A stretch of 64,000 nt of DNA from Hyphochytrium catenoides (GCA_900088475.1 FLMG01004723.1:1-64000); one strand, 5' to 3'; shown: positions 1 through 49,800, counted from the first letter of the stretch. A program made the numbers and translations. The notes: a model not told the origin generated them from the sequence alone.

Positions 1-91
1 ATTGATTTGGGTCATCGCTGCACTGACGCCGCCCACATGGAGAGAAGAGTACACAGCTGGCCTCATTCGTCAAAGGGGTCGACAGTGACAA

Positions 92-95
<4 letters not shown>

Positions 96-126
<31 letters not shown>
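96..126. repeat. (AG)n microsatellite
   Basis: Perfect AG dinucleotide run visible in the sequence. Confidence 0.95.
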
Positions 127-132
<6 letters not shown>

Positions 133-301
133 ACTCGAAAGAATATAGAGAGGAAAAGTGAGTTCAAAGACCGCTTCCAAAGGAGAGGAGAGGCCACCAT
201 AAGCTGTTTAACCTGCATCAGAGCTAGGGGACGTGGCCTTAGCCCGTAGACTGTTATTTCTAGGAAACGGAGCTTGAGCTTTAATAACCAGTCCAACAAG
301 G

Positions 302-721
302 ATGAGACGAGTCAATCTCCTAAGCTGCACCGGCCATCTCCAGCGAAGGTCTCGGTCCGCAGTTCCCTCCTTGAACTCTCTGGGCAAAAGGACCAGGCTG
401 TTGTCTGTCTCGTCCTCTCCATCTTCTGTCATCCAGAGTCTGCCTGAAGTGTTAGAGTCTGAGTCCCTCATTCGAGGAGGAAAGGCCGCTTTAGCTCTCT
501 CTCCTCTCTCCCGCGCGATAGAAATTTGCGAGCACTCAATGGGCAGTGACTCAGAGTTCACCTGGGCAGCGCGGACGAGGCTCATTGAGCTCTGCTTCTA
601 TCTAGGGAACTATGAGAGGGTGGACAGGATGCTGGAGGTATCTTGCGGCTTAGTTTCTGCGTTTTGTACCACTTCCCGCGATCTATAGTCTCTCTCTCTC
701 TCTGTCTCTCTCGTCTCTTTT

Positions 722-19821: not shown

Positions 19822-22800
19822 TTAGGGGGCAGTAGCGATTGCAGGGTTCTGATGACCGAGACAAGCAAAGTCCCGTCCCAAGGATTGCTGATTACAGGGC
19901 ACCCCTATGCCAACACTGTTGACGGCGGAGACTCGAATGTAATGAGGATTGTTGGGGGGTAAGGTGAGCGTGTAGGAGCAAATGCTGTTCGCACATGCCT
20001 GCGTTGCTGATACATACAGGCTCGACCTTGAGAAGGACGCCCAGCCGTTTGCCTCCGTCGTTGACACATAATCAATGATGAATTGTGTAATCTGAGCTCC
20101 TCCATCAGCAACAACGCCTGCCCCTGACTCCGACGGCCCGCATAAACTAGCACTTGTGATAAAGTGCTCTGGGTCGCCCTGGCATGGATGCCCCGAATGA
20201 GGAATGACGGGCATCATCCAACTCAGGTTGACTTGTCCGCTCAGACCTGGACTGATATGAATATTGGCAGGTTTGCCAGGAGGCTGGGCACTGGGAACAA
20301 CGCCACCTGGAGATGCCACTTGGGCATACCCTCGTCCGGCAGCGTTGACAGCGTAAACCTGAAAGTAGTATACTACTCCTGACTGAAGTCCAATGATGGT
20401 ATGGCAAAGGCGAGTGTAGGACGAAGCGCTAACGTCAATGGGGACAGTGCCTTTCAGTGGATACTTGCTGCTGCTAGTAAAGGTAGGTACCATATCCCAC
20501 TCAATCTGATACGTCCGAATTTTGTCTCCACCATCATCAACCTCTTGCAGAGAACCGGGTGGATTCCAACACACTGTGACCTTGGTTGGAGACACTGCGC
20601 CAGCCAGTACCGATGATGGAGCTCCGGGTACGGTAAACGGATTAAGCGATTGTGGGATGGATGGCTGCCAATTACCTTGTCCCCTTGAGTTGACCGCAGC
20701 AACCCGGACGTAGTACTTGGTCTTGAGATCCAGCGGCTCAACTTGACTCCCTAATAGGGTTGTATATGGTGCCGTAGAGCTAAGCAAGCTGAAAATTGAG
20801 GTCCGAGTGGTTTGGGTGGTAAAGCTGGGGCTGGTACTATAGTGGATCACATAGTTAGTGATCTCATCTCCGCCGTTGTCGATAGGTGGACTAAACAGTA
20901 ATCGCAATTGATAGGCGTTGATAGCTTCAATTGTTACGTCTGTTGGTTTCCCAGGTGTAACCATTGGTCGCTGCGGGCCAGGAGCTAGCGTAGGAGCACC
21001 ATAACCGGCACTATTAGCCGCAAAAACTCGGACGTAGTACATTAATCCAGTCACGAGATTCTGCGTCTTTGGAAGTATCGTTGGTGCTACGCATTCCTGA
21101 TATGTGACTGCCTGCTGCCGAAGCTCCACAGTCACACCAATAGCAGATGTACCCACCTCAAAATACTGCCCTTCTGAGAGGAAAGTAACAGACCACACAA
21201 ATAGACCTGGGGTTGTCGTGGAAACTCGGCTTACAGCCACGTCATAACCGAGATCCCGGAATCTCATTTCCATGGAACCAGCGAACTGGCAGCTGCTGCA
21301 TGCCAGATTGCCATCAAGGGCAGACTCCTCAGCCTTAGAAGCGATAATGTCGTGTGGCATGGGAGCCGTATTGAGCGTAGAAGAATCTCTAGCATCTCTA
21401 ACAGACAGAATAAATGAGCCACCGATAACGCTCGGGCTTGTGTGCACTGTCCATACGGCAAGGGAGGAAGCGGATGGACAGTACACCTCGTCAACATAGG
21501 GCGAATCAAAGGCTGGACTCGTGTCCAGCTCAAAACGGTACTTCAGAATAGCATCACCACCATCCGATAGCGGCCGCATAAAGCTGGCTCTTAGATGATG
21601 TCGGTCTCCCGGCACCACTTCAAGAGCTACATTCATTGGGGGACCAGGTGCTTGCTTGGGAGGTATTACTGCAGATACAGTTCTACGCTGTAAGCCATTA
21701 CCAGCGGCGGATATAGGAGTGACTTGCATCATGTACCCTTTACCAGTCACTAGGCCAGTGACTTCATAGACATGGGTTGCTGCATCCACAGTAGCTGAGG
21801 CGTAGCCGACAGGGCTCTCGCCGACAGTGCAAGGAGGACAGAACAGCTCGCCGGTCAAGGGGTCAAGCACCGTGTTTCCCTCCCTGACCTCAACAGTCGC
21901 AGGAAGTTGTGGATCTGCAGGCACTAAACTTCCCGTGTCTATCAACATTGGTGGTACATCTTGTAGAGTCTCGCTGAAGGTGACCAGGTACGTGGGATTC
22001 ACACTTGATACCTTGGAGACTTGTACTTGCCGGGTGCCAGCTAAACTGTTGAGAACCTCTGCAACATCAGAGGCGGAGGCTGAGGCGCTAATCCAGTCAG
22101 AGAAAGGCGACCCTCCAAATTGCAGGCGGTAGAAGCCTGACATGGTGTTACCAAGGGTAATTTGCTGCACTTCAGCATGTCCTCCAGGACGACTCCCATG
22201 CTGGAGGGTCCCTACAATAAGATCAACATTAGCGCCATCCAGACTATGGCTGGGCCTTAGAGCTGGCACATCTCCGTCGGCAGCGTTGAACGTTACAGTC
22301 CAAGTCCGTGTATTGTCACTGACATAAGAGCCCACAGTGAGATCACCAAGCATAGGACTTGTCCCTTCCAGCAGCATCATAAGGTTATAACGCAGATCTT
22401 GAGCGGATGTAGCTGAAGTCATCATTGCTGTCTGTTGCCCTTTAAGGAACAGGCTCCAAGTACCCCCCGGCGCCACATGGCCGGCGTCCCATCTCATCTG
22501 AATGACTTGAATTTCTGGCCTGCTGCCACTAGACTCCCACCACTCGATGAGGTAACTGCTAATCTTTAAACCCCCCGTAAACTGAGGAGGGGCCCAGGAA
22601 AGGGTTGCGGTAGTAATAGGAAATTCCTGACTTCTCGGCGTTGAGACTTTAAGCAGACTTACGGGACCTGATTTCTGCGAGGGCCTAACGCTCATTCCCG
22701 AAAACACTGGTTGCCCGAATCCGGCTGCTGAAAATGATCGCACTCGCACGTGGTACGCAAGTCCAGGAGTGATATCATCAGAGATGATGTAGAAGAGTCT

Positions 22801-25800
22801 ACCACCATCATCTAGCTTGGAGAGGTTTTCGCGTGGTATACTGCTAACCAGTGGGTTTCCAAAGGCCTTTTCTGTATCCCAGGCTATTTCATAACCTGTG
22901 ATGGCGGTCGCCACATCCAAGCCACTCTTTCCTCGTCCATCATGGTCCGGAGGCATGAATGTCACTGAGATCTTTGAACCCGATCGCGCGTAGACCACCA
23001 AATCTTTTACCACCGAAGGAGGCTTCGGACCAGTCACAACTGCTGAAGCTGGGTGACCCCATTGGGTGTTATCGGGAGGATTGCCGCTGACACTTAGCTG
23101 CTGAGGGATAATATGGTTACGGGCCGCAATCCGGAAGTAGTACTGACCGGCTGTTGGCACTCGAATAACAGCCGAATACGGAGGGCTGCCTGTAGGGGTG
23201 ACCTTGACTGCCTCATACCTCCAAAATCTTATCATCGCGCCTTCTGGATGGAAGGTATCCATGGCTGGACATGGGGAAGAGCTAAATGATGGGGGGGTAA
23301 GGATAATTGTTTCGTGGGTACTGCTATCGACAGTCCGTCTGCATCCATCGAAGAAGAGCTGGTCACCAGGTTTGAAGGAATCTGTTGGGCTATTACCAGT
23401 TGCCAGTCTGATGGTATTCGTGGAGAACGAATAACTGGTGCCACAGCTGTGGCAAAAAACAGCGTTATGTCTAAACCGGTTATCAGTATCAAACTGGATA
23501 TCATAATAAGAGATCTCATAATCTCCAGAAGCTGAAGGATTCTCAGGCGGTGACCAAGTAATGCGAACCTCATCATCAGATAGTGCTTGGAGGTTGATAT
23601 TCAAAGTAGGCCCCGGCAGACCCTGAGGAGTCGCTGTGATTACCGATTCCGTAGGACCCCATCCTTTCTTGTTATTCGCGGAGACGCGCAGATGGTATTG
23701 CCTACCTTGAATCAACCCGTTCGAACCCGCAGGGATATAGTGACACTTCTGGCAATCAATACCCTGAGTTACCACTGTGGCACTACTTGGGAAGACTTCT
23801 ACAGCGTGAGCAGATAACGTTGAGATAGAATCAAGAGGTCCATAAAAGTGGAGAAGCCATTCCCAACCAAAGGTGGCCTGATAGACGACCTCTCTTACAC
23901 TTGTCACACCCTTGTAACTTGTAGGCAAACCATTCAGGTCGCCCAAATACAGTCTGTCTGCTCTCATGCCGTTAGAAGCCGCGTCCGTGATTAGATACAT
24001 GCTGTCCGAGGCCATCCTACTTGATACGGAATCAGGCAGCACCGTGTACCAGGAGCCTCCAACGTATATCTTATCTCCAGGTATACCAAACTGCCCAGCA
24101 GCAAAGTCGCAGATCACGCCTTCCGCGCACTCCAGATAACTCTGGCCGGCAACAGCGCTAACTGCTGTGTTTAGGATTTTAGCCTTTGAAGGTTCTTTGA
24201 TGACCCTTACAGAAATCTTAGGGTCCATGACTGCTTCAAGCGCTATTTGCACGTCGGTAGCTGAGGACCATGCATTTAAATAGACTAGATCTTTTGATTT
24301 ATATGCCAATTGGAACGTTCCCGTTACGACATGTTTGAGGTTGGTCAGAATGCCGGATACGTCAGAGGAGGTGTCACCCGGAATCAGTAGTGAAGTGCCA
24401 GTGCCTGTGAGTAATGACCCATCGAAAGACAAAGTATCCAGATGTTCGAAAACTCTGTGGAAGCGAATGTAGATCCTATTTCCATCGCAAACACGGGAAA
24501 CTGGCGAGTTGGCGTATACCTCAATACCTTCTGTTGGAATTGATGATAACACCTGCAGAGCTTGCCTCACTTCAGCCAAAGATGCAGTTGCCGGTATTCC
24601 TTGAGTAGTCTCTGACTTGAGTGAAACAGTAAATGAGCCTCCTGTGGCGGAACAGACAAAAGTCTTGATGGCCTTCCTAAATGGAGTTCTCCCCGCGACT
24701 ACCTCAACGACGTGGACGTCTGAAGAGCTCGATTCAAGCAGAGGAAGAGGCCCAATCTCTTTGAGAAACGTAATGTCGTAAGGCTGGGCGCTCTGGATAG
24801 TTCCTGTCGCGGGTGTTATCCGGATTCCCCCACTGGATATAGAGCCCAAACTCTCAAGGGCTTCAACCAAATCGTCAATGGTGCTAGATCCAGGCAGAAC
24901 ATGCGCCGTCTCTTCGGTTCTGAACCTTAGATTGAAAGATACAACTCCATTCGCAATGGTAAGCTGTTGAACTGCATAGACCACTTCATAGTGCTGGTGG
25001 TATAGTGCTGTAGGCATTGCCATGACCACTTTCAGGTGCCGCTTAAGCCTTTCTGACTCGTTCAACACTTCACGCCCGTATGCATATGAACGAAAGCTAG
25101 TGCTGGTATCCCATTCCACTTGATATTGGGAAATAAGGTTGCCGTTGCCCTCGCCGGCAAGATGCGAAATCCAGAGCTGCGTGCCCGTAGGACATGCACC
25201 TTTCGTTACCTCGTCGACTGCGACAAGCACTGCTTTCCCAGTGAGTCTCGTTGAGTCCGCCGTCAGAGAAGGGATGTCGCAAGCACCAGACAAATGACCA
25301 TCATAGAATGTAATAAACCATTCATAATCACCCTGCCAACTAAGTGGGCCGTTCTGCGATACAGTTACTGTTCCAATCCCAGGCAAAGCCTCCAGGGCTA
25401 CCTTCATTTCCTCCGCAGTGGCAGAGGCTGAGAGCGGCTTACTCATTGATCCAGATCCCATTTGTAGTCTGAAACTGCCCCCAATTACATTAGCAGCTGT
25501 TAAACGGGTAATGTGAACTGTCGCGTTGATACCAGTCAATCCGTTGACTGCTTCATAATATAGCCCAGGAGCGCTATTCAGGAAGGTGATTACCCATGTG
25601 AAGCCACCTAAGCACCGAAAGCAAGCGGTTAGGAACCATCTCTACACATTGGCTTGATAACCCTTACCTCTTGCGTCCGGTCCTGTGCGCTGCACATCAA
25701 CCTCTTCAATTCCGTGAACCTCTGTTAAAATATCCTCAAAGGTGTGCGGATCAACATTGTAAGGGATGACAGCGCTCTGGAAAACTGCAAAGTGTCCCCC

Positions 25801-28800
25801 TAGATGGTTGCCCCCTCGTATGGTGCGGACGGAGCACTTGGAGGGCCCATCCACGTTACAGACAAGATTTGGTATGTCCGCGAGGTCAGGGTGGAAAACA
25901 AGGGTGATGAGCCTTATATCCTGGCTCTCTCCTAACGGGCTACCCTCAATAACCTCTAATCGGTTTATAGCTGGAAGAACTTCAAGATCTGCACGCAGAT
26001 CAGCCATTGGGGAATCACCAGATAGAGTCTGGAATCTCTTGCTAATCTGAATAAGGAGAATAAGGGGAAGGAAGTAGAGGAAAGAAAATTGTAAGGGTTT
26101 TTCCGTGACGACAGTAAATTGCTAACCACTTACCAGAGTTGCTGCCACCGTAGCTCCGCTGGGAACCATAATATTGTCTTGGACCTTCATGAATGGCTTA
26201 CATATTGAACCAGAGAGTTCAACATTTAGGTCAGGGACATTCCCTGTTACCACCATTTGGTTTCCTGTGAAGTATATCATGTACTCCAAGCCTACTTGAG
26301 ATTCAGACGTGGTTCTTGTACTTGTTACAAAAACGTGATCAACGTTATTTAGGCTGTTGAGCTCTGCCTGAATAACTTCGGCCGCTTCGTTCCATGCAAG
26401 GCACCCCGTGGAAAATGATTGACTGTTGAAGACAACCTCAAGTTGATACTGACCTTCAATCAGCTCACTGTCAGCCAGTACTTGAAGCGAGTATACCGGA
26501 GTATTTGTGCCAACCGCCGGATAAAGCGTGGCGGTGCTAGCTTCCACCAGAATATTCGGACTTGAGGTGCTTATAACTAGCTCTTCAACGTCCCCAGCAA
26601 CTTCAGCTCCAATGAATCGTACCTGATGTTCAAATCCTTGACAAGAATCCTCCAGAAGATCAGACGTCTCAACCTCCACACAGACCGAGGCGAGGCAGTT
26701 CATAGAGTCAAGCTGATTCAATGCTGTGGCCAAGCCCTCTCCAACCAAATCCCAGGCAAGTGGTCCAGTGGTAGAAACAATACCACCGCGGGAAAATGCA
26801 AGACTGAACGTTCCCGTCGCCCCCGGAATCCGGCGGCAGACTCTTATTGTCTGTTCCTCTGGAATACGTAGAGTTATGCTGCCTACGGTAGAGCCCTCGC
26901 CCACAGGAGTAACTCTGACTTGCTGAATCTCGCCAATTGGATCCGCGGTTGTCTGAACTTTTACGACCTCATGAAGTAGCCGCGCATGAGTTGAAACTCG
27001 TTGAACCTCGCGGACGTAGGTTGAAGGCCCAACCTCCAGGTCCATGACGGCTTTGGGTCTATCATAAGCACTACCTATTATGACATTCGATGGGGCGGAA
27101 TACCCAAGTAAGTTTTTGGCTGTTACGCGGAAGTGGTATTGGAGACCCATTTGAAGGTCTTCAAAGAGTGCAGAGGTCGGAAGACCTCCAGGAATTAGTG
27201 CCTTAACGACGACACTCGCATTAAGCCCGCGCAAGCTAGACCGATTCTCGTCGTACTCTAGATCAACCTTTGCCTCATTGCTTGAGAACCTGATGTAGTA
27301 GTTGAAACCAACCTCCTTGTACAAAGTCAGGGTCTTTGGTAGCGGTGCTTCGCCAATAAATGCAGCCATCCTTGTTGGGTCTTTCCATAATCCAAGAGGA
27401 AGAGTATGACCGTCATAAGGCGGAGGTCCGGTGTGCTCGTTGGGAATACATCGCTTCTGACAGGCAAGAGAGATGCTTCTACTTGGCCCATGGAAGCTGT
27501 GTCCTTGTGGAAGGCTTAGCTCTAAAGATAAGTATTTGGGGGTGTTGAAGTAGAGGGAGTAAGTTGAGCCCGCTTCTGGCCTTCCGGGGACCGTCAGTCT
27601 TCTGGTGACCGTTGTCGTGAACTGTAACTCTAGAACTGTAAGAATTGCCTTCTCGATTTCTGCATCGGTGGCGTCCCATGCGAAGGGTCCTACGGTAAAA
27701 CTCTGTCCATCAAAACCTAGTGTCACGGAAAAGTAAGTAGAAGTATCCCCACTGCTAAGCCCATTGAGACTGGTGTCTGTGATAATAATAGTCCATTCTG
27801 GCCGTTCAGTCTTGAAGATGGAGAACATTTGCGGTAGCATAGATATGGAAACCCTTCCTTCAAAATCACCCATGAAAGGCCTATCGAGAACAATTTGGCG
27901 AGACCGCTCTCTTGCCGGAGCATTCCCACCTCGCATTAAAATCTCTGCTCTCACCATACTATTGGCTCCACCCACATGCTGTCCAGTGCTTCCACAAGAA
28001 TCGATACCTAAGTCGACACCAAATCTGGCGGTCAGAGCTTGCGACGTTTGGAGTTCTGGGAATCCGACAAAGAAGACCAAGTACTCATAGGAGGCTTTCC
28101 CCTGGCGAACTGTTTCGACTTTAGAGTGTATATAGCTCTGTAATGGAGCGAGACAAGCATTATCCGAAGGGAGTACAACGAATTCTGGAACGTTGCCTAA
28201 CAGGCGGGCATTCCTCCCTCCTGCCCTGGAACCCTTAAAGTGCAGAGTGTAGCTGTATCCGTAGGCGCTGGACGGACTTCGCAAGTCTCCACTTCTTGTT
28301 ACTACAACTTCATCCAGGGGTCCAAGAAGTCTATTGGAGCTGTCGTTGGTATCCACCATCGACTTGACCGAATCCTCCAACTCAATGGCCGTGGAGCCCA
28401 ATTTGACACATGAGCTGCGATACTCCACACCACCAGTTTGCACGCTTAATCGGTAATATGTGTTATCTGCATCCGTTAAGACGGGCCCCTCACTCGCAAA
28501 GGAGATCTTTTGAATTTCACTGACGGACATACCATCGCCAAACCTGCTGACCATAACTCTGCCGCGACCAGGGTTAGAAAAGGCGGGTAGTTGCTCTAAG
28601 GCATGTTGTACGTCACCAGCTTCTGCACCCCAATTCAGGCATGCTGTCTTCTCATTGCTGCTTTGCGTCAGCACCCATTCCGCTCCTTGCTTGATGTTAC
28701 CAGCATCCACGGCAAGAGTGATCTTTTGCACGGGAGTGTAGCCGCCCTCGACGACAATGGACGCTTCAACCTGAAAGTTAGCATTGGCATGCGCAGACAC

Positions 28801-31800
28801 AGTATTGACAGGAACCGCAGCTGTGATTTTACTCCCCTCAAAGTATATGTTGAAGACAAGGGAACATACAGGCCCTGAGCAATGATTATCAATGCCGGGC
28901 TGTGTAACAATCACTCCACTGTCATCGGTGGCAGTCTGGATCATTTCTTGGAGGGTGGATGCTGTAAGTCCCACGACATCAATGCTATTGACTGCATACG
29001 TGATGTCATTGTGAGTGATGAATAGATCAAAAGTTCCCTGAGGGTTAAGGAGGCTAGAGGCATACGTGATCACCAGCCGCTGTTGCGTCGAACCAGTGCC
29101 AAACACAGTGTAAATATCACCTCCAAGCAGGACCTCCTGGCCTACAACAAGATTGAGAGACATGGATTCGTCTGGAGTGATAACGGGATAACCCCGCTTG
29201 ACGTGGACAAAGCCCGGAACTGCAACGGCACCATCGTGAATAGAGTTTCCACCTCCCACTCGGAACCTGTCACCTTCGGAAAGGTAACGCCGAAGATCCA
29301 CGTCGTGGGAGTAAAACCTGTTCATGTCTCGCGCTACTTCTACCGTCAAAGTTCCGAGAGGCTTAAATAATGGCCGACGGGTGACAGATACTGTACCGAC
29401 CCCATTGAGACTTTCCAGCTCTTGCTTTACAATCGCCGAAGACGCGAAGGCGGGGATGCTGCGAGTTCCCATTTTACCATCTACCAACAAGGCAAAGGCT
29501 CCTTGAAGCGGCGTCGAACCCTCCTTGTGGACGACAACCGATATCCTGCTATTAGTCCCAGTCATTCCAAAGCCTTCCACACTTAGGGTTTGTACATTCC
29601 CGCTCCCTGCTGGAAATGACTCCCCATTAAAGTTTCCACTATTCCTTATGAATCGTATTCTCCACACGTAGCCTCCTTTGGTACCAGCTCTAGCGACTGG
29701 CAAACCATTCCATCCCCCGGAGCAGGTCGCCGCACTGCAACTTTCTGTGGCTGGAAAGGCACTCCGGGTCACAGCCACTCGACCAACCGTCACCAACTGA
29801 TTCAATTTTGCTTCCAAGCGCTCTGCAGACTCATCAAAGGCGGAAATTAGCGGCCCATTTGGCGACGAAAAATCGACGAGGAATGACCCCCCAAGAGGGG
29901 TGGAACCCCTCACAATTTCTTGTGGGGTTACGGTGTACTCCCGAGCGTCAGGCTGGACAAGAACGACTGCAAGGGCGGCCACGTCACCGGCTCCTGGTGG
30001 TACATGGCCAGGATTGCTGACAAATTGGACGGTGAACGTCATCGAACCATATTTGTTGACAGCTTTTCTCGTCACCACGACTTGTCTTCCGGAAAGGCAG
30101 CTTTCAAGGTATGCCTTCAAAACAGATGGCTGAACGTTCCAGGGTAAATTGAGGTTTGAGTCACAGGATCCATCCGTCGCTATTTGAAAAGACGAGAAGG
30201 TGCCCCGCAACACAGTACCGTCCCTTCGAGTTTGCTGTGTCATGCTTGCATCTTTACCCAGCAGCCCAGAATACGTTACCTCCAGCGGTGGCATGTTTCC
30301 TGGAGAATTGCAGCGTCCTCTCTCGTCCTTTTGTTCACAAGTCTTTCCCACGTCATGCAGAAAAGTTATCGACCAGCTGTACGCTCCATTTGTCCGGTCA
30401 ACATTACTTCTTGAGACCTGAACTTTCCCCACATTGGGCATAAGTTCCAAAATTTCCTCCATCGAAGTGCCAGCGCCTCCACTTTCAACCCGGGTAGCAG
30501 GAGCATTATGGGAGATGGGCTCAGAGGTATACCGTCCCCTCACCGATGCCCTACATTCCTCAAAGCCTAAAGATCCACAACTTGACGTATCCAAGGTAAT
30601 TGTAAACGTTCCTCCAAGTGGTGAGGTACCCTTGACGGCAGTTGTCACTAGACAGGAAATATGACCACGCTGCTGAGGGTTGGTCGCTAACAGATTATCT
30701 TTAAGACACTGGATCTCAGCTTGTGGTCCAATATTGCGTCCCCAAGCTCTCGAAAACCGCTGACCGTTGGAATTAGCTGGCCACGTGGCGTCCCAAGTTG
30801 AGGAGCTTCCCCAGAGTGCAGTTGCATACCAGTTCCTATCGTCCAAGTTTGTCATGTGGTCCTGAGTAGGATCTCTCCAGCGTCCAGAACGGAAAGTGAC
30901 CCTCCATTCATAGCTAAGCACTTCAGAGTCTCTTATTGCTCTAGAAACTTTCACGACGCTGGGCTCTATAGATGGCAAGGCGTTGAGAGCCTCTTCTACC
31001 TCTAATGGGTCTGCGTTGTGTGGTAACGGAGACGTCACATAGCCACCAAAAGATAGTGAAAAATGTCCATCGAGCTGATTCCCAGTTACTGTCTCCACTA
31101 TCGAAAGAGATGCCCGAGAAGGGGTATATGCGTCGAGGAGCTTTGCTGTATCAGCCACTGCAAGAGCTCTAACATCCCCGCCGACACTGGGGTGATCGAA
31201 GGTTATTGACCACGAGTATCCAAGAGCCTTCGTTGGACCACTCCGCGATATAGAAACACAATAAGGCACTGCCTTCCAGGTACCTGTTGTCGACATCACT
31301 TGTGACGGACAATTTAAAGGACTTGTAAAGCTGATGACTGATCCTTGCAGTGTCGCAATCACAACTTGGCACACGCTGCTTGATGGTAGATCGGGGAGTT
31401 CTAGAAGTGTGCCTGAAGCGAGTTTCTTCTGCTCAAAGTTGCTAATGGGATCGTCGCACAATATTTTCATGTCCACAGGTTGGAACAGGCACCTAGACAG
31501 CTCGAACCCGAAAAATTTTTCGTTGAAGACCTGGCTAAAAGCATTGGCCGAAAAATGGGCATCAAATTCTGCCACCTTGCTCACGCCATTCTGTAGAAAG
31601 GAGAGTGAAAATTTACTCCCAGGTCGAATCTGATTTCCCTGTGAACACACAGCCGTCAAGCCGCTAGAAGGAGGGCACACGGCAATTGAGGGTAGCACGT
31701 CAGAACCAGGAGTACCCCCATCTAAATTCGCAGCCGAGGCCGTCAAAGGGCTCACGTTGCCTGGATGGTCTGTCCAGGTTATGGCCCAAGAGAACTCTCC

Positions 31801-34800
31801 CGACCACCTGCCGGAAGCAGGAATAACTGGTTGCCTCGTTACAGCCACCGGAGAGCTGTATGCAGTCGAGAGCTGTACACTCATAACTGCTGCCGGGACG
31901 TCCCAAGCAAACTGTAAGGACAATCCAGCCTCAACAATGTCCACCGTAAACATTCCACCCAGCTGAGAACCTTCGATAACCGTCTGGACTTGGCACGTGG
32001 ATGCTGCGTCTGTAGTCAAGCAATTGAGTGGCTTAGCGTCGCCGTGTCGTGAGTGAAACGTTACGGTCCACGCGTAGCCAATCACAGCATCAGTATGGAC
32101 CTCAACTCGGGAAGCTGTAACGGATCCTAGTTCGCTGAGGTACGCTTCTACAGCAGCCGAAGAGGTATCCCAATCCAAACCAAATCCTGGAGAAATAGGT
32201 GGCTGCGTTGGTGACGATGGATAAGATGAAGGATCGTGCAGGTCTTCGACATTATAGGAGAGAGAAAATTTCCCCTGAGGCTGGCCTTCTAAGAGGCTGC
32301 CAGCGTCGTATTGTATTGGATCAGGTCCGAGATATAGGGGGATATTGACTCCACCTTGAGCACAATGAAGGTTAGAGTCATATAATGACACACGAATACC
32401 CACACCGACATAGGCCGCGCGTATGGTGATAGTGATGACCGCATCGTTCCCATTAGTGGTGCTTGTGACCTTAACCGTCGGTCTAGCTAGCTGCCTCTTA
32501 TCTTGAAGGTTCGAAAGACTAGCCAGGCCCTGTTCAATACTCAAATCCGAAGCGACATCAATTGGGGACTGGGAGTTCGTTATTTGAACACTTCTCACAG
32601 CACAGAAGACGCAGAAGCTCTCTGTATCTACACTAAGCCGGAAGGTTCCACCAAGATCGCCTCGAGGGCACGAAGGAAACGTTACTTTCCAGACATCATC
32701 TTTGTGCGGAGCCGTTAGTTTGACCTCCTGAACTTCAGCCAGAGGATTGCTGACTGAGGTTTCCAGCACTTGAATTTGGTATGGCTCCCGGGGTGCATCA
32801 AGATGTACTGTTTGTACTTCATCAACGTCAACGGCCTCGGTGTAAAACGTCTGTTCTTCCTCTACGGCGCTTGCAGCGGACGTAGAGATAACCTGAACCT
32901 CATCAACACCCAAAAATTCAGTTGTCACTGCCTGTACCTCATTGGTTACGTCAACGGTGGCGTAGATCCATTGTTCTTCATTCACTACGTCCGCCGATAG
33001 GGAGAGTAGCTGGACGGTACGGGGAACTGGAACCACTCGACTGGCGTACATACTCGAGTTGAAGGAAGATTCTATATCTCTTTCCAGAATGAACTCGTCC
33101 AGTGCTTTACCACCGTTGGTTCCTGAGAAATTCCACTCGAGAAGAACGGACGCAGAGCTTTTTGGCTCAGCATCTAGGAGCAGAGGAGCAGATGGCACCT
33201 GTGCTCTGGTCCGGACACTTAGCGGCCAAGACACTTGCGGTTCACTTTGACCCAGGGGACTGATGGCTGATACACGAACATAGTACTCCAAGCCCTCCTC
33301 GATCTCCTCACCTTCTTCGGTATGTTGACCCGGTCCTCCGATAACGTAGAAATTCTTTGAGGACACCACCCTGGTGCTTCTAAAAAATGGCGAGCTGAAC
33401 AGCGCGGAAGTGTCCCAATGAACTTCGTAGTGGGTTATCGCAGCACCTCCATCACCTCCATACTCAGGCAATTGTGACGATGGGGGCTTCCAAGTCACCT
33501 CTATGATAGTCGGAGATGGCGAAGTGAGGGTGACCTCAACAGGGGCCCCGGGTGCTTGATTTTGGGCAATAATTGACTGTGGTTTTGAAAATGCTGGAGA
33601 GCTAAAGCCCATCCCATTATGAGCTTTGACTCGTACAAACCGAGGGTTAGCGGCAGATGTGGGGTTGATCTCGATATTGTAAAAAAACTTGCCGCTCGGG
33701 AATAGTTGAGAATCTGAGGGCACGTCGGCTGAAACGCAGCACCCAGCCGATGGAACATTAACAAAGCTAGGATCCGTATCCCATTCTACCCGGTAATAAT
33801 CTATAGTGTCCCCACCATCGTCTGCTGGGCGCATCCAAATAACCTTAATCAGTGATGAGGATAGCGAAGTCAAAAGAACATTCTCTGGCGACCCAGGAGT
33901 CCTTCTGGGGGTTATGCTTTGCACTGTGACAAACTCTCCGGTACCCTCTGAGCTGCGGCTAGCAACTCTAACAGTGTAAGGCACTCCAGCTGTCAAGCCA
34001 ACAATCTCAGCCGCCCCATAGCCCACGATACCGGAAGGAATGCTGAGGAGCGGGTTGCCAGCATTAGAATCACAATAACCGGTGGGTAGCCTGCCGTTGA
34101 CTGTCCGCGTCACATCCATTGTCACATCAATGCCAGCAAGACCTGCGGTATGAACAGCGAGGATATTCTCCTGGGGCCCCAGATCTCCAACGAATGTGAC
34201 TACCCAAGAGACGGTATGTCCATACTGAAATTTCGTAACCTTCACTTTCGAGATAGTTTGAAGCTTATTAAGGGCAGCCTGGAGTGTCTCTGCCGAAACA
34301 TCAAAGGCCAAAGGTGGAGTAATTTGAGAACGCTGGGAGCGCACGATGGAGACTCTAAAGGATCCTGTGACCGGGCTTATGCCCCCAATTTTTCTTTCAG
34401 TATGTAAGAACGGGTTGGTTCCGGACCAGCTGTCGAATCCCTGTGGTACGATGAGCGGTTGACCACCAACGTTGCTGATGAATGTTATGGACCAGCTAAA
34501 GCCGTGAGCATCCCTAAATACTGCTAGCTTCGACCCGCTTATGTCCAACGTAACGTCAAGAGTGACAGCTGAAAGGCTGGCAGCAACGACGGTCAGTTGT
34601 GTATCTTCTAGTCCCTCAAGGAAGATCTTGCTGCCTACGCTCAAGGTACCTCCATTGAGTGTGACAACGGGAGAGCCTTTGGAGACTGTGGCCGTCATCC
34701 CTCCATATCTCTCTAAAGTTCTTGATCTCGTGACCTGTACCGTCCCGATTGCGTCCAGTCTTTCTAGTCTTTCTTTCACAGACGCAAATCCTACCGCTGG

Positions 34801-37800
34801 AGCGTTGTATGCTATAGGTAAGGTCGATTGCCCCATAAAGCTGAGCCTGAAGTAACCGCTCAGATTGTCAACATCTGCACCTGAGCGGACCACTTGCACC
34901 TCAGGGACGCCATCACCACTAGATAAGATGATAGTTTGCTCTTCGGCTTGATAGTTAGATTCCGCTGGCCACCAGTCTACTACAACTGGTAAAGGGTGAA
35001 GCTCCAAAGCCGCCGACTTTGAGCTTGCCCATCGGACCTTAATTGATGTTGAGGAGGTAGACGCAACATCGACACCTCTTGGCGGACTGGGCTTTCCAAG
35101 CAATCTAAACTTGGTAGTTTGTGAAGCAAAGCCCGCACCTCTTGCATTAAACGCCGTGACCCGTGCAAAATAATCAACTTCTTCAGAAAGTCCTGCAATG
35201 GTAATCCTGGATATCAAAATCAAGGAGAAAGGGAAGTGAGATTTGAAAGGCCCCCTAGGTTATCTAGACAAAAGAGTGAGAAATACTATCGCTTCAAGGA
35301 GACTTTACTGAAGATGTGTTTTGACATATCAGCTGGCGCTCCTTACCTATACGGGTCAGTGCCCATGACGATATGGGAGACTTTGACTCCAGGTTCAAGA
35401 CCACTGACGCCAGCGTCGTCCGCTATCAAGAGTGGAATATTGGATCCACTCACTCTTCGATCACGAGACATCTGCGCAAAAGTGATGGTCCAGGAAAAGA
35501 GTCCCAACGTTTTGTCCACAGTGGTTCGCTCGACATGCACCGTTGATAAAGATTGATGAACATCTTCTAGTGTTCTTCGCATATCTGCCGCGGACGCATC
35601 AACGGGTATTGGCTCAGAATGCTTGCCCTCCACATTGAGGACAAATGCTCCACCTACTTCAGTTTTAGAGTAGACTGTAATTGCCTGAACAGCGTAGGTG
35701 TAATCACCTGGAACAATGTCACTTTTGCCAGGCTTAATTTCCTCCACAAGGATTTGTGGATGACTACCACTAAGCTCGGTGCCATCCGCTTCAAGCAAGC
35801 CTAAGTTACCAATTACTCCTTCGAAATAAATGGTCCACTCAGATCCCCTTGCAACGAGCTTCTTACTCACTCTAAGAGGCGAAGGACCGAAGGTCCTGGA
35901 TATGAACAAATCCTGCAAGCTTACTGCCATGTCAGTTGCGTCTATATCATATGGTAGGAGGCCGGTAGTAGACCCCCCAAACGACAGTCTGAAGGCTCCT
36001 CCGGGAGGATCGGCGTCCGTGTTGTCTCCAAAGATAATTGTGACACGCTGAACCTCAGGAATGTATTTTATCTGCCTCAGTCCGTACTGAGGGGATGACG
36101 GTAAGAAGTCCAAATTCGTGTCCCATTCCAGATAGTAGCGTGTGACCTGTGCCCCTCCATCCGAAAATGGTGGCCGGTATCTAACATTTACCATTCCCTC
36201 TCCATAGTGATCCTCTATAACCAAACCGCGCGGAGCAGAGGGTAGAGTTCCAGTAAATGGCGCTGTAGATGCTTTAAGAAGGTTAGACGAAATCCCATAG
36301 CCGTGTTTGGCGTTACCAGATCTTATTCTGACGCCGTAACTCTGTGATTCGCCAAGGGTAATAATGCGGTTGCCGTTGTAGACCGACATTAAACCTTTGC
36401 CCTCTCTGTGGTGGCGAATGCTGAAAGCAGTAGATGATACACTACTTGAAAGCATTGGAATGCTTCTCGACAAAGTAGAACCAACGAATCTGACGGTATA
36501 TACCTGAGCATATTGAGTCGGAGAGGTATACCGGCGTTGGCGAGACAGCTTGACTCCCAGCCCAGGTTCTGAAGAAGAAACCAGCAGACCTAACGCCTCT
36601 TGCAAAGCGTATTCATCCTCTGAGATCTCCCAGGGAAGAGTTGGCGTGACTTTTCCCGCGAACTCAATGAGAAAGCTCACGCCGCTCCCATCTTGTGGTT
36701 CTTCATTTAAGAAACTCATGGTTTGCACCTCAGCGTGGTAGCCTATTGACAGATGATCGGCAGGCCTTGCTAAAGAAATGGTCGTCCCAATTGTTGCACC
36801 GAGGCCCCGCCATGTCCTCTCTGGTATGGCTTGGAAGGATTCCAGCAGTGCATCTTCGTTAAAAAGAACGACATGCCGGAAACCAAAGGCGATTGCCTCG
36901 CCGGGCTCAAACAGTATGTCCCGAGATATGGTGCCCGCAACGGTTACAGAACTCATGGAAACGACTAAGATCATGTACTTCGTGTCAGCAATCCAAATTG
37001 GCTGTCCTGAAGTAAGAATGTCCATGTGGTTGGCGGTCGTTTGTAGTTTGGACGAGCCAGCTTTAGCATAGAAATAACCAGGTAGTTTCTGTCGAGTTCT
37101 TGTAACTTTGCCAACATTGACAGGCACTCCTTCTTGACCCCTGAGAGAAAGAGGACAAGGTATTGTCAAAGACATAGAAGTAGGGCTCATGTAGGCCACT
37201 GTCGCTGAGACATCGCCACATTGAACCACGTCGCCTTGTGCAAAAGTTTGAAGAGGATTGATGGCTGCACCGTATTCAGCGATTGTTATTCCCGATAGCG
37301 TAATGCCGTCCAGTGACACTTTTGACCGCAAGGAAAGGGGAGAACTTCCTTCTTCGTCCTCAAGGAGGAGGGCGCTGCCGAGGCTAGTTAGGTCATTTAG
37401 TGCTGTCTTTACCCTCAGATGAGTAGCGTATGGTGATAGGCTCGCCGTTTCGTCCCCATTATAGTACAACCTGAACGAACCGTCAATTGCTCCGTCCTGG
37501 ACAGCCGACTCTACTATTCCTGCTTCGTAGACCCTCACCGTAACATCAATCCCCCAAATGAAGCGATCATCAATCTCAATCTTCTCATTGAATAGATCCG
37601 TGTCCAGAAGAGTCACAAACCATACCCATCCATTGACCCCAAAGTTGTGAACCTTAACTGACACAAGTCGAATCTCGGGAAGACTCTCCAGCGCTGCCTT
37701 GATATGCCGGTCGGTAGTTGGCAAGTCAATGGTACCAGAGCTCGACCCGCCATAGTGAATTTTCACAGATCCTCGAATCTCAGAGAGGGCATCAAAGACC

Positions 37801-46800: not shown

Positions 46801-49800
46801 CTTGTGGCTGAGTATGACAGTGCACAAGAGTCGCAAACCCTTAAACCAAGCGGCACGTTTGCCATTCCCATAGCGCCGCCTATAGGAGAACTGCTGAATG
46901 ATGGATCTACATCCCATTCCAGATAATAGCCCGTAAGAGGAGCTCCACCTGTATATTCCGGTGGTCCCAAGTATACTCTTGCCGAGTTAAAGGAAACAGC
47001 CTCTAGCCTTGGTGGAAGTTGGGCATTGTACATGTCTGCCGGAGGAAGTGGGGGAAGAATGGGCACCGTGAGTTGGGACTGGGTCGAGAGTACTCGCTTC
47101 CCATAGCCAAAAGAGTTCCCTGAGGCAACTCTGACATGATATGTAAGTCCTGGTCGCAAATTTGAGATTACATGTCTATAATGGGAACTATCCACATCTG
47201 AGATGTCAATGACGGGACACGGACCCTCCAGCGTCAACTCTTTCTGGCTGCCGGTAAATGGAGAGCAATTATGTCCTTTTTGAACTCTTAAAAACGTTGT
47301 GCCCGGATCAGGGGCACTGTAGAGTAGAAGACGACATGGCTGACCACCCCACAGAAAAAGAACAGTGGCAAACTCTAGTTGCGCTGCTTGGTCCCTTGTC
47401 AGAGGAGTTGTAAGGAGGGTATCATAAGGAGCAGGGAGATTCTCAATTGTCAAAGAAATGACGTGGTTAGCAACATCGCCAGAGAAAACGTCACTGTAGC
47501 CTGGACAGTAGGACTTCGTAGGAAAAGTTCCGATTTGTCCGCCGTTTTCTGTCGCAGAGACTTGCACCGTTACGCCGGTTCCAGTAAGGAAGGGGTTTAC
47601 CGTAAAAAGCGGCAGTTGCCCTAAGTCGGTGGTGAAAGTCACCAACCACGTAAAGAGCTTGAGCGCAGCATCACGGGTAATCCTGTTCACAGTCACAATT
47701 CCCACGTTAGGAAGATTATGCAAAACCTCTTCCACTCGGCCGGCAGAAGCGTCTGCTGGAAGGAGAGCTGTGGTATGTCTCTCTTTGACGATGCATGTTC
47801 GACAAAACGTAGTGTCATAAGTCAGAGAGAACCATCCGCCTACGGCGACGGCACCATCTGACCACAAAGCCATAACGTGTTGTCTATAATCTGAAGTCTT
47901 CCAGTCAGCAACGCCATATTCCACAAGTACGCTTGTAGTCTCCCTACCAAATGGATGATAAATATCTACCGCAAGGCTTGTTCCAGCCACGTACGTATTT
48001 GCCTTCTCATTGTCAAATGAGAGAGACTTCAGAGAGACTTCAGAAGGTGGCGGTGCCTTGCTTCCTAATACAACTGGACGGGTAGGTGAAAATTCGCCAT
48101 ACCCAAGCGAATTATGTCCAGAAACGCGAACGTAATAGGTCCCACCAGCGATGAGACCTCTTGCCTCAAAATAGTAAGAGGAGGGTGGTACCATCCGTGC
48201 TCGTTGTGTATAGAGGATAGGAGATGTATTGTGTAAATGGACAGCAGCACTCTGAAGGTTCCAGCCGTTACAGGCGTCCTCTTTCACAGTGATGGTGGTC
48301 TGGCTGATCACGCTTTCCACCGTGAAGACACAATTTGGCTGGACATCAGGGTCTATGGCAAGCCTCGCCCCAACCTCCAGCAAACCGTCCATATTATAGC
48401 TAAAGACGAAGGTTTTGGAAGCAGGGTCAAAATCCTGCACGCAAGCATTGCATACTTGGTAGTTGTACGACGCCGGTCTACCAGCCGTCGAGTCAAAAGT
48501 AGGAGATGTATCGAATTCCACTTTGAAAGCGTCAACCTGTTCCACAATACCTCCCCAGTCTGAGCTGTCTCGGAAGCGCACAAAAAAGGCCGTCGCGGAA
48601 TGGAAAAGCTGCATGCTAGGTCCTGACCCTGTCGATGGAACCTCCAAAATTGGGGATAGTGGAAGTCTACGAGTGCCAATATAGACCGAGCCAGGCGACA
48701 AGGATGCTTGACACGCTTCATTTCCATCTCTGCATATTGGGGAAGCTACCTGAGCTAGCTGGCCCTCTCCCATACTGTTAATAGCACGAACACGAACCAT
48801 GTACTGCTCACCCGGCACCAGATTAGAGATCCGGTGAGAGTATACCCTGGCCGACGCATCAAATTGAGTGATATACTCGTAGTTTCGGGCTAGTAGCCAC
48901 GCTGTTTGCCCTGGAGATGACAAAGAGAACATGTTGCATCGATTCTGTGGCTGCACCGATATGGTGGTGCTGTTCACTACAGAGAGAACTGTGGTGATGC
49001 AGTTATGGCCCAGGACGATGGCGTTGCTGAAGTGCAGTTTGTCGCCCACAGATAATTCTTGAGGTATCTGCTGGTCGAACACGACATGGCTCACGTCAGG
49101 GTCCAGCCGATAAGATAAAATTCCGGAGGAGAGAGGTTGTACCGCTAATTCACGTTGGTCATAACTCCACCACTCAAGGCAATATGAAGTGACAGGTGTG
49201 CCACCGTCACTCGCTGGGGGCCTAAAATGAACATCCAATGCCTGACGATCAGTGTTTACAGATGAAACGGTGACATCTACCGGCTTATCTGGAGTCCCTC
49301 GCGGAATTTCTCTGGGCGGCTGGCTCGCTTGATAGTAACCGATGCCAATCGAATTTCTGGCTGCAACCTTGACGTAGTAGTGCTTTCCTACTTCAAGATA
49401 GCCACCGTGGATCTCCGTGCTGATTGCAACCATCGGTCTCGCTGCTGGTGTTATGGCAGAGCAACTTCCCGTACCGTCGTAGGAGGATACTATAAGCTCC
49501 TCGACATCTCCTTTGAGGTTGGGACCACTGAACGTGATGTGGAACCTGTAACCAAGTCCCGTACTGGGGGTTGCGCTGATAAGCTCCGTCGTCACCCGAA
49601 CGCCTCTCGCGTTAAGAAGAGTCGATAATGATGCTTCTAGGCTTTCCCCAGTGAGTTCATTGACTGTGATGCAATCCGATCTCGGCACGCGGTGCAGACT
49701 CACTCCAGACATTTCTTGAACACATGTCTGATCATTGTGGAAGATGATACGGGTGGCATGAACCTCACGCACCTTAAGGGTACACCCAGTCAGACCACCG

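What the first reader, a model, noticed from the sequence alone, without database searches (positions are those of the whole stretch)
27185..33021. Nine-level Russian-doll nesting: 9 stacked 'EVQ' first strands followed by exactly 9 strand-less domain bodies inside one split FN3 domain
Seen in sequence: elsewhere in this protein the ~100-aa module reads EVQ-strand, G.F.L.F, T..I...AS...V..ALE.L..VG.V.V, Y.W..TF, GD.P.L, V.....G. At 33021-32677, nine ~13-aa first strands occur back to back (RTVQLLSL, NEEQWIYA, NEVQAVTT, DEVQVIST, EEEQTFYT, DEVQTVHL, YQIQVLET, AEVQEVKL, DDVWKVTF). Nine bodies follow, each starting directly at the G.F strand with no EVQ strand of its own (LGGTFRL, PQGKFSL, LGGMFTV, PGSKFSL, LDGHFSL, LGGTFTI, LRGTFSS, LGGSFLV, LQGAFAL). 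The host FN3 starts at ~33198 (VPSAP..LEW..TNGGKALDEFILERD) and finishes about 1,950 aa later (ALFEDLQMGLQYHFRVTAKNLLG, ~27180-27070). Inference: each module is inserted in the strand-1/strand-2 loop of the previous one. The chain would then run out as one extended strand and return through the bodies in reverse order. The result would be a two-chain, shear-clamped rod, similar to pilus donor-strand complementation but in cis, branching off the FN3 backbone. I know of no description of this architecture.
Basis: partly seen in the sequence, partly recalled or inferred. Interest (0 to 1): 0.95.

Follow-up and report, generated by a model that had tools for sequence, protein, structure and literature searches.

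The report
Nine-deep nested domains inside one FN3
One fibronectin-type domain of a giant stramenopile surface protein carries nine copies of a small phage-like domain inserted one inside the next, deeper than the six levels that a 2026 survey of 2.7 million domains gives as its deepest example.

Summary
On the minus strand, 32674-33021 encodes nine EVQ-type first strands at a 13-residue period. Nine domain bodies follow, each with its own C-terminal tail strand but no EVQ strand. All lie between the two halves of one FN3 domain (33064-33204 and 27082-27180).

Three independent lines support reverse-order nesting:
- **Stoichiometry.** Across 153 relatives the number of EVQ strands matches the number of bodies per FN3 host, including hosts with strand clusters. 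In one homologue the 90 tokens form a perfectly balanced bracket word of depth 14.
- **Structure prediction.** AlphaFold2 with an orthologue alignment places strands 9, 8, 7 and 6 as the first strand of bodies 1, 2, 3 and 4. Strands 1-5 were left unplaced.
- **Covariation.** Among 18-34 orthologues, covariation at the strand/beta4 ladder positions favours the nested pairing over all but 4 of 362,880 alternatives.

The module is a homologue of the mycobacteriophage Bxb1 CTE domain (PDB 9d93) and also occurs in stramenopile tubular mastigoneme proteins (PDB 9ufe). It has no Pfam family.

Recursive insertion itself is known: six levels in the cyanobacterial RNA polymerase SI3 region, and apparently three levels in Bxb1 gp23. 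This is therefore a new, extreme variant. The rod shape and any mechanical role are inferred, not shown. The scan had already noted this same stretch once (s1-336248).

The parts
33064..33204 (-). N-terminal half of the host FN3 domain (strands A-C), B674-720
   Evidence: Own FN3 profile matches positions 3-48 of 95. The same split in the neighbouring host was confirmed structurally: 102 residues aligned to intact FN3 over model range 2..401, Z 14.4.
32674..33021 (-). Cluster of nine EVQ-type first strands (S1-S9), 13-residue period, B735-850. S1 32995-33018, S2 32956-32979, S3 32917-32940, S4 32878-32901, S5 32836-32859, S6 32797-32820, S7 32755-32778, S8 32713-32736, S9 32674-32697.
   Evidence: The cluster recurs in orthologues from oomycetes and a diatom; a loose motif chain gives a modal count of nine units (18 of 33) and a modal spacing of 13 residues.
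32281..32655 (-). Body 1 (innermost module, partner S9), B857-981
   Evidence: Contiguous CTE domain of the Bxb1 capsid protein aligns to model range 116..251 = S9 + body 1 (Z 9.0).
31963..32280 (-). Body 2 (partner S8), B982-1087
   Evidence: Single-domain targets align to model 103..363 = S8 + body 2. S8 is the best-covarying strand for this body.
31627..31962 (-). Body 3 (partner S7), B1088-1199
   Evidence: 9d93_Md, 9d9w and 9d94 align to model 88-91..469-472 = S7 + body 3 (Z 10.6). Covariation rank 1.
31075..31626 (-). Body 4 (partner S6), with an inserted domain after the helix, B1200-1383
   Evidence: 8giu_1, 9cba and 8foy align to model 72-78..655-658 = S6 + body 4. Covariation rank 1.
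30619..31074 (-). Body 5 (partner S5 by the nesting rule), B1384-1535
   Evidence: Module profile hit 3e-15. Covariation with S5 gives Z 3.1, rank 4 of 9. Not placed by AlphaFold2.
30211..30618 (-). Body 6 (partner S4), B1536-1671
   Evidence: Module profile hit 1e-12. S4 is the best-covarying strand.
29896..30210 (-). Body 7 (partner S3), B1672-1776
   Evidence: Covariation Z 5.7, rank 2. K/R at strand position 12 goes with E at beta4 position 74 in several lineages.
29509..29895 (-). Body 8 (partner S2), B1777-1905
   Evidence: Strongest covariation, Z 8.1. E8-R78 against V/I/L8-Y/F/T/S78, and D/E12-R74 against Q/R12-E74; the window itself has Y12-V74.
29365..29508 (-). Body 9, N-terminal part (G.F strand, helix, third strand), outermost module, partner S1, B1906-1953
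   Evidence: Module profile hit 1.5e-9, positions 10-58 only.
27334..29364 (-). Large insert in the beta3/beta4 loop of body 9: barrel domains plus further modules that have EVQ-like strands of their own
   Evidence: Read from the translation and profile hits at B2165, 2301 and 2501. Orthologue token strings show '' units between the eight closes and the last close.
27181..27333 (-). Body 9, C-terminal part (beta4, GD.P-like strand, tail strand), B2631-2681
   Evidence: A beta4-type motif lies just upstream of the FN3 C-half in the window and in orthologues. Covariation with S1 gives Z 3.8, rank 4.
27082..27180 (-). C-terminal half of the host FN3 domain (strands E-G), B2682-2714
   Evidence: Own FN3 profile positions 60-92 of 95.
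33814..35106 (-). Neighbouring FN3 host with two EVQ strands and two bodies, used as test case (B40-470)
   Evidence: AlphaFold2 with 32 orthologues: mean pLDDT 90.9, pTM 0.70; both strands predicted as beta strands with pLDDT above 90. FN3 split and inner module confirmed by structural alignment.

Best explanation
The segment encodes a recursive domain insertion nine levels deep. The repeated unit is an alpha/beta module of about 100 residues, homologous to the CTE domain of mycobacteriophage Bxb1. Its order of elements is beta1 (EVQ), beta2 (G.F.L.F), helix, beta3, beta4 (Y.W.VTF), a GD.P strand and a tail strand.

In the canonical module beta1 pairs antiparallel with beta4, and the module's N-terminus touches the end of its tail strand. 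A whole module can therefore be spliced into a loop.

Here each module sits in the beta1/beta2 loop of the one outside it, and the outermost sits in the loop after strand C of an FN3 domain. The chain leaves the FN3, lays down beta1 of modules 9 (outermost) to 1 (innermost) as one stretch with a 13-residue period, and turns at the tip. It then returns through bodies 1 to 9, each joined to the next by a short conserved connector of the type EG-S-x-P-L-x-G-x-F. Finally it closes the FN3.

Inferred: the product is an elongated side branch of nine modules, each tied to its neighbours by two short covalent links. The branch is held off the main FN3/filamin/PA14 chain of a giant extracellular stramenopile protein. 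Its most likely role is structural, as a stiff projecting arm or spacer. Its modules would be shielded from tension along the main chain until the host FN3 opens, and would then be exposed from the outside in.

Shown computationally: the pairing order. Inferred: the rod shape, cis rather than trans pairing of the outer levels, and the function.
For: Module identity. A profile of 81 modules hits Bxb1 gp23 (9d93) at E 1.5e-46, the Bxb1 capsid CTE at 6.5e-7, and the 9ufe chains 'Tubular mastigoneme protein' at 6e-7 and OCM5 at 3.5e-6. Structural alignment to 9d93 gives Z 14.3, rmsd 1.6 A, 103 residues.

Topology of the canonical module. Mutual information over 392 modules gives the ladder 8-78, 10-76, 12-74 between beta1 and beta4, and contacts 5-109 and 7-111 between the N-terminus and the tail end.

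Strand-less bodies and the strand cluster. Split FN3: with a structural precedent in the neighbouring host.

Conservation. The cluster recurs in orthologues of Phytophthora, Saprolegnia and Thalassiosira, with a modal count of nine units and a modal spacing of 13 residues.

Stoichiometry. Strand and beta4 counts per host correlate at r 0.83. Hosts with a detected run of 7 strands have on average 11.8 strands and 12.2 beta4. Among hosts with 6 or more tokens, 37 of 58 never go negative in bracket depth, against 14 expected and at most 23 in 500 shuffles. P0021 gives a perfectly balanced 90-token bracket word of depth 14.

AlphaFold2 on B725-1900. Strands 6-9 are beta strands with pLDDT about 70. 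Contiguous single-domain PDB targets align to model ranges 116..251, 103..363, 91..472 and 75..656. Each range starts at the predicted strand and ends at the tail of the predicted body.

Covariation over 18-34 orthologues. The nested assignment scores 39.5 against 22.9 +/- 3.8 for permutations; 4 of 362,880 are as high, and 2 of 362,880 after rank-1 removal. It is top-ranked for bodies 2, 3, 4, 6 and 8.
Against: - AlphaFold2 left strands 1-5 as coil with pLDDT below 30. It modelled bodies 5-8 at pLDDT 70-88 without them. The whole model is only moderate (mean pLDDT 62, pTM 0.34).
- No coordinates are returned, so pairing was read indirectly from the aligned ranges of a sequential aligner.
- A log-odds score trained on canonical modules did not single out the nesting (rank 18 of 120 for the outer five).
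- For bodies 1, 5 and 9 the predicted strand is not the best-covarying one (ranks 5, 4, 4).
- In the two-level host the covariation test was uninformative, and the partner of its first strand was not read directly.
- No RNA run was listed and there is no experimental structure.
Confidence: 0.75

Rival explanations
1. Strand exchange between molecules. The inner levels fold in cis, but the outer cluster strands complement strand-less bodies of neighbouring molecules (three-dimensional domain swapping). This would polymerise or cross-link the giant protein into a fibre or mat.
For: Strands 1-5 lie 600-1,900 residues from their bodies and were not placed in cis by AlphaFold2. Counts and covariation fit cis and trans pairing of the same partners equally well. 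The protein looks extracellular and matrix-like (FN3, PA14, filamin).
Against: Short connectors on both the outgoing path (about 5 residues between strands) and the return path (about 5 residues between tail and next G.F strand) favour a closed linear stack. The inner four levels are modelled in cis. In the two-level host both strands are modelled with pLDDT above 90 as a monomer.
Confidence: 0.12
2. The strand cluster is a separate element, a beta meander or flexible 13-residue repeat linker. The bodies are complete domains in which the preceding tail strand takes the place of beta1.
For: Bodies 5-8 are modelled at pLDDT 70-88 without a cluster strand, and strands 1-5 come out as coil. Each body is directly preceded by a beta strand (the tail of the previous body) at hairpin distance from its G.F strand.
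Against: - Strands 6-9 are placed in bodies 4-1 rather than with each other.
- Strand-specific covariation with the beta4 of the predicted body includes charge swaps between S2 and body 8.
- One strand per body holds across hosts with clusters of 2, 3, 7-9 and 14.
- Canonical modules have both an EVQ strand and a tail strand, so the tail does not replace beta1 there.
Confidence: 0.1
3. Artefact: an assembly error, a decayed pseudogene or a chance run of short repeats.
For: No RNA run was listed for the stretch. Three of the nine units are weak by the generic matrix.
Against: The reading frame is open for 3,033 codons. The same architecture recurs in some 30 colinear orthologues from independent assemblies of oomycetes and a diatom at 30-40% identity. 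Such runs do not occur in shuffled sequence.
Confidence: 0.02

Closest known systems
SI3 region of the cyanobacterial RNA polymerase beta' subunit (rpoC2): recursive insertion of hybrid-motif domains
   Same: Domains of one family are inserted into one another repeatedly, giving a discontinuous, hierarchically nested chain. A survey of 2.7 million classified domains presents it as a six-level nested architecture, its example of the most complex case (PMC13114784).
   Different: Different fold and a cytoplasmic enzyme. Six levels against nine here (ten counting the FN3 host, and depth 14 in homologue P0021). Here the split falls after the first strand only, so the N-terminal pieces are single strands stacked at a 13-residue period. 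The host is an extracellular FN3.
Mycobacteriophage Bxb1 gp23 ('tail tip cage', PDB 9d93) and the CTE domains of Bxb1 capsid gp14 and tail tube gp19
   Same: Same domain family by sequence (E 1.5e-46) and by structure (Z 14.3, rmsd 1.6 A). In gp23 three N-halves are followed by C-halves, and 103 aligned residues span chain 327..567. That suggests this domain is nested in a solved structure.
   Different: In gp23 the split lies in the beta3/beta4 loop, each copy keeps its own EVQ strand next to its body, and the depth is three. It is a phage particle decoration whose function is unknown and which is dispensable (PMC8704799). The gp23 nesting was inferred here from alignments; the primary paper was not readable.
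FN3 domains with an insert in the loop after strand C, such as the second FN3 of the insulin and IGF1 receptors
   Same: FN3 is split at the same region and still folds. Receptor FN3 chains align to the model with about 93 residues spread over more than 200 chain residues (7v3p_B, 6vwj_B).
   Different: The receptors carry one largely flexible insert, not a stack of folded, nested domains.
Donor-strand complementation in chaperone-usher pili
   Same: A domain lacking one edge strand is completed by a strand that lies elsewhere in sequence.
   Different: Pilins are Ig-like and lack the last strand, and the donor comes from the next subunit with the help of a chaperone and usher. Here the fold is alpha/beta, the missing strand is the first, and the donor is most likely in the same chain. 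This is a resemblance in principle only.
Stramenopile tubular mastigoneme proteins (PDB 9ufe: 'Tubular mastigoneme protein', OCM5, OCM6)
   Same: They contain the same module by profile search (E 6e-7, 3.5e-6, 0.04) and come from the same broad group of organisms.
   Different: They are proteins of about 370-720 residues with one detected module each. No strand cluster was seen. The entry's paper was not found.

Membership tests
Fibronectin type III domain (host) | Seven-strand sandwich detectable by an FN3 profile over its full length | tested here: met
   The two halves match complementary parts of an FN3 profile: positions 3-48 at B674-720 and 60-92 at B2682-2714. Pfam fn3 hits flank the region. 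The structural proof is for the neighbouring split host only (Z 14.4 over model 2..401).
Bxb1 CTE-like domain family (the EVQ module) | Significant sequence similarity to the CTE domains of Bxb1 gp14, gp19 and gp23 | tested here: met
   Profile against PDB: gp23 1.5e-46, capsid 6.5e-7, tail tube 0.003. PHROG major tail protein 2e-5. No Pfam family matches.
Bxb1 CTE-like domain family (the EVQ module) | Same fold as the solved domain | tested here: met
   VIA-align Z 14.3, rmsd 1.6 A, 103 residues, 26% identity for the inner module of the two-level host. Z 10.6, 9.0, 8.6 and 8.0 for modules of the nine-level model.
Nested (recursive) domain insertion | A contiguous inner domain lies inside the sequence of a discontinuous outer domain, and the two pieces of the outer domain form one fold | tested here: met
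   For levels 9-6, single contiguous PDB domains align to model ranges 116..251, 103..363, 91..472 and 75..656. These ranges are properly nested intervals.
Nested (recursive) domain insertion | The same holds for all nine levels | tested here: inconclusive
   AlphaFold2 did not place strands 1-5. Covariation favours the full nested assignment, with 4 of 362,880 permutations as high, but per-level ranks for bodies 1, 5 and 9 are 5, 4 and 4.
Chaperone-usher donor-strand complementation | Ig-like pilin lacking its C-terminal strand, completed in trans by the next subunit | tested here: not met
   The fold is alpha/beta with a helix, the missing strand is the N-terminal one, and the modelled partners are in the same chain. 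Analogy only.

The most novel reading that the evidence does not exclude
Stramenopile giant surface proteins may use a general bracket grammar: any number of first strands can be written first and closed later by the same number of bodies. This would yield self-threaded, doubly linked rods of chosen length (2, 3, 9 or up to 14 modules) that branch off an FN3 backbone. Such rods would be a new class of natural mechanical element, with an obligatory outside-in unfolding and inside-out folding order. The module itself is shared with actinobacteriophage particles.
Probability: 0.5. Interest if true: 0.85.

Novelty: new variant of a known kind. Interest (0 to 1): 0.78.

Why it matters
Recursive domain insertion is rare. 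The 2026 survey read here presents six levels as its most complex case. This stretch has nine levels of one family inside an FN3, the arrangement is conserved from oomycetes to a diatom, and a relative reaches depth 14.

The split after a single strand raises a folding problem: the outermost module cannot close until about 1,900 residues have been made and folded. It also predicts a strict mechanical hierarchy that could be tested by single-molecule pulling.

It gives a natural template for building rigid, doubly linked protein rods of set length. It also adds an unnamed domain family with solved structures, found in Bxb1 phage particles, in stramenopile flagellar hairs and in these giant proteins, that deserves a family model.

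Tried and rejected
- **Initial reading dropped.** At first the strand before each body looked like that body's own first strand. Canonical tandem modules have both an EVQ strand and a tail strand, so that strand is the previous body's tail.
- **Regex counts** were too crude and were replaced by position matrices and profiles.
- **Body-N profile** was specific (823 hits, none in reversed sequence) but missed about half of the diverged nested bodies. Beta4 was used as the body marker instead.
- **Log-odds score** trained on canonical modules was inconclusive: best of 24 for four outer levels, but rank 18 of 120 with body 9, and 22% of permutations as high overall.
- **Register control**: shifts of 2 give similar mutual information per pair, so the exact register is not established.
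- **Covariation in the two-level host**: all Z values 1 or below, uninformative.
- **AlphaFold2 of B725-1900** did not resolve strands 1-5.
- **tblastn** of one module against the phage collection found no match.
- **Papers.** The Bxb1 structure paper is not held. No paper was found for the 9ufe entry. A search on 'Russian doll' and 'matryoshka' gave nothing relevant.
- **Sequencing runs.** Only three small DNA runs hold the stretch and no RNA run was listed.

Full report
**Setting.** The minus strand of the window carries one giant gene. Its open pieces are 35343-63989 (9,548 codons, running off the window), 26122-35223 (3,033 codons, called B here) and 19822-25539 (1,905 codons). The first two are separated by a GT..AG intron that cuts through an FN3 domain. 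Pfam finds FN3, PA14/GLEYA, filamin and GEX2-type Ig domains, but nothing for the roughly 100-residue EVQ module. A profile built from the gene's own copies detects about 55 of these modules in the window. Orthologues at 30-40% identity are unnamed proteins of Phytophthora, Saprolegnia, Pythium, Nothophytophthora and the diatom Thalassiosira. The organism is therefore a stramenopile and the protein looks extracellular.

**The observation.** B735-850 (32674-33021) holds nine EVQ-type units with a period of 13-14 residues. Six score 8-20 bits with a matrix from 192 canonical modules. Three are weak but conserved position by position in orthologues. Runs of three or more do not arise in shuffled sequence.

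I first suspected that the strand before each body was that body's own first strand. Canonical tandem modules settle this: each has an EVQ strand at its start and a tail strand (V.V..V.EG) at its end. In the nine bodies the tail of one runs within about five residues into the G.F strand of the next, with no EVQ strand between them.

The host FN3 is split. A profile made from intact FN3 domains of relatives matches B674-720 at positions 3-48 and B2682-2714 at positions 60-92. One correction: body 9 holds a 680-residue insert after its third strand, with barrels and further modules that have EVQ-like strands of their own. Nine is the number of strand-less bodies, not of all bodies.

**What the module is.** A profile of 15 and then 81 modules hits PDB 9d93, chain Ma, the 'tail tip cage' gp23 of mycobacteriophage Bxb1, at E 7e-32 and 1.5e-46. 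[quoted passage not shown] The CTE domains are dispensable, immunodominant and of unknown function (PMC8704799). gp23 is said to carry three CTE-like domains (PMC13252515). In gp23 the profile finds three N-halves followed by C-halves, and a structural alignment puts 103 residues across chain 327..567. This suggests the family is nested in a solved structure, at the beta3/beta4 loop.

Mutual information over 392 canonical modules shows that the EVQ strand pairs antiparallel with beta4 (pairs 8-78, 10-76, 12-74). It also shows that the module's N-terminus touches the end of its tail strand (5-109, 7-111). This geometry lets a module be spliced into a loop.

**Test 1, counts.** Over 153 proteins, the number of EVQ strands per FN3 host tracks the number of beta4 strands (r 0.83). 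Hosts with a detected run of seven strands have on average 11.8 strands and 12.2 beta4, where about six surplus strands would be expected if the cluster were an extra element.

Writing each EVQ strand as '(' and each beta4 as ')' gives these results. Among hosts with six or more tokens, 37 of 58 never go negative, against 14 expected and at most 23 in 500 shuffles. Orthologues of this host read as eight opens, eight closes, a few '' and one last close; the ninth open is below the detection threshold. Homologue P0021, with a 14-strand cluster, gives a perfectly balanced 90-token word of depth 14. Many of these hosts are orthologues of one another, so they are not independent samples.

**Test 2, structure prediction.** The neighbouring host has two strands and two bodies (B40-470). 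With 32 orthologues it gave mean pLDDT 90.9 and pTM 0.70, and both strands are beta strands above pLDDT 90. Intact FN3 domains align to it over model range 2..401 (Z 14.4), which proves the split FN3. gp23 aligns to its inner module at 65..245 (Z 14.3). The partner of its first strand could not be read, because no coordinates are returned.

The construct B725-1900 holds nine strands and bodies 1-8. With 19 orthologues it gave only pLDDT 62 and pTM 0.34. Strands 1-5 came out as coil below pLDDT 30, while strands 6-9 are beta strands near pLDDT 70. Contiguous single-domain PDB targets align to this model over four families of ranges:

| Model range | Content | Example targets |
|---|---|---|
| 116..251 | strand 9 + body 1 | Bxb1 capsid CTE, Z 9.0 |
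| 103..363 | strand 8 + body 2 | 9ki1_1 and others |
| 88-91..469-472 | strand 7 + body 3 | gp23, Z 10.6 |
| 72-78..655-658 | strand 6 + body 4 | phage Patience gp22, Z 7.8 |

Every range starts at the strand the nesting rule predicts and ends at the tail of the predicted body. The four inner levels are therefore nested in the model in the predicted order.

**Test 3, covariation.** I aligned 41 orthologous segments to a profile in window register. For each of the nine strands and each of the nine beta4 strands I summed the mutual information at the three ladder positions (18-34 sequences per cell).

The nested assignment scores 39.5, against 22.9 +/- 3.8 for all permutations, and only 4 of 362,880 reach it. 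After removing row-times-column effects, only 2 of 362,880 do. The predicted strand is the best one for bodies 2, 3, 4, 6 and 8, second for body 7, and ranks 4-5 for bodies 1, 5 and 9.

The clearest pair is strand 2 with body 8. E8 goes with R78 and V/I/L8 with Y/F/T/S78. D/E12 goes with R74 and Q/R12 with E74. The window itself has Y12 with V74. This test reaches the outer levels that AlphaFold2 missed. The exact register is not settled, because shifts of two positions give similar values per pair. A score trained on canonical modules was inconclusive.

**Mechanism.** The chain leaves the FN3 after strand C and lays down the first strands of modules 9 to 1 in one stretch. It turns at the tip and returns through bodies 1 to 9, joined by short conserved connectors. 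It makes the large detour inside body 9 and then closes the FN3.

Because a module's two ends lie together and the insertion site is at its other end (the beta1/beta2 turn), the modules should stack head to tail. They would form a side branch, each tied to its neighbours by two short links. That shape, and any role as a stiff arm or as a hierarchically unfolding element, is inference.

Pairing of the outer strands with bodies of other molecules cannot be excluded. A separate fold for the strand cluster is disfavoured by all three tests.

**Comparison and novelty.** Domain insertion is common and nesting is rare. A survey of 2.7 million domains presents a six-level nested architecture in the cyanobacterial RNA polymerase SI3 region as its most complex case (PMC13114784). 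The same CTE-like family appears to be nested three deep in Bxb1 gp23. FN3 domains with an insert at the same loop exist in the insulin receptor family.

What is new here:
- the depth: nine, or ten with the FN3, and 14 in a relative;
- the split after a single strand, which produces the stacked-strand cluster;
- the conservation of the arrangement from oomycetes to a diatom;
- the bracket-like rule that holds across many hosts.

I class it as a new variant of a known kind. The scan had already noted this stretch once (s1-336248) and the smaller nests nearby (s1-336247, s1-336151).

Noticed in passing
P0021:233-403 and onward (homologue, not in the window): A cluster of 14 EVQ strands. Over the whole 7,591-residue protein, EVQ strands and beta4 strands form a perfectly balanced 90-token bracket word of maximum depth 14 that returns to zero three times. 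No FN3 C-halves were detected in it.
   Followed up: partly
PDB 9ufe chains BA, EA, FA; profile A4: The EVQ/CTE-like module is present in solved stramenopile tubular mastigoneme proteins (E 6e-7, 3.5e-6, 0.04). One unnamed domain family thus links actinobacteriophage particles, flagellar hairs and these giant proteins. No Pfam model matches it.
   Followed up: partly
PDB 9d93 chain Ma, residues about 269-590: Bxb1 gp23 shows three N-halves of the module followed by C-halves. One module of 103 aligned residues spans chain 327..567, which suggests a three-level nest at the beta3/beta4 loop in a solved structure. Whether the authors describe it could not be checked.
   Followed up: partly
window 34480-34740 (B about 162-248) and 27334-29364: A small all-beta 'barrel' domain is inserted in the beta3/beta4 loop of some modules (model residues 123-209 of the two-level host). 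This is the same loop that is used for nesting in gp23. In body 9 such barrels themselves carry further modules.
   Followed up: partly
window 26125-27010 (B2738-3033) and the next exon: A second stack of four EVQ-like strands follows the host FN3's C-half and continues across the intron. Orthologues show the same.
   Followed up: no
window 35208-35346: A GT..AG intron of about 140 bases cuts an FN3 domain between its insert-bearing middle and its C-terminal half.
   Followed up: no
window 49002-63989, minus strand: The upstream part of the same gene has three PA14 domains (one also matching GLEYA), four filamin repeats and GEX2-type Ig domains. These suggest carbohydrate binding and a rod-like backbone.
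   Followed up: no
window 32956-32979 and 29509-29895: Relative to orthologues, the window sequence carries a double change: Y instead of D/E at strand-2 position 12, and V instead of R at body-8 beta4 position 74. This looks like a compensated pair.
   Followed up: yes
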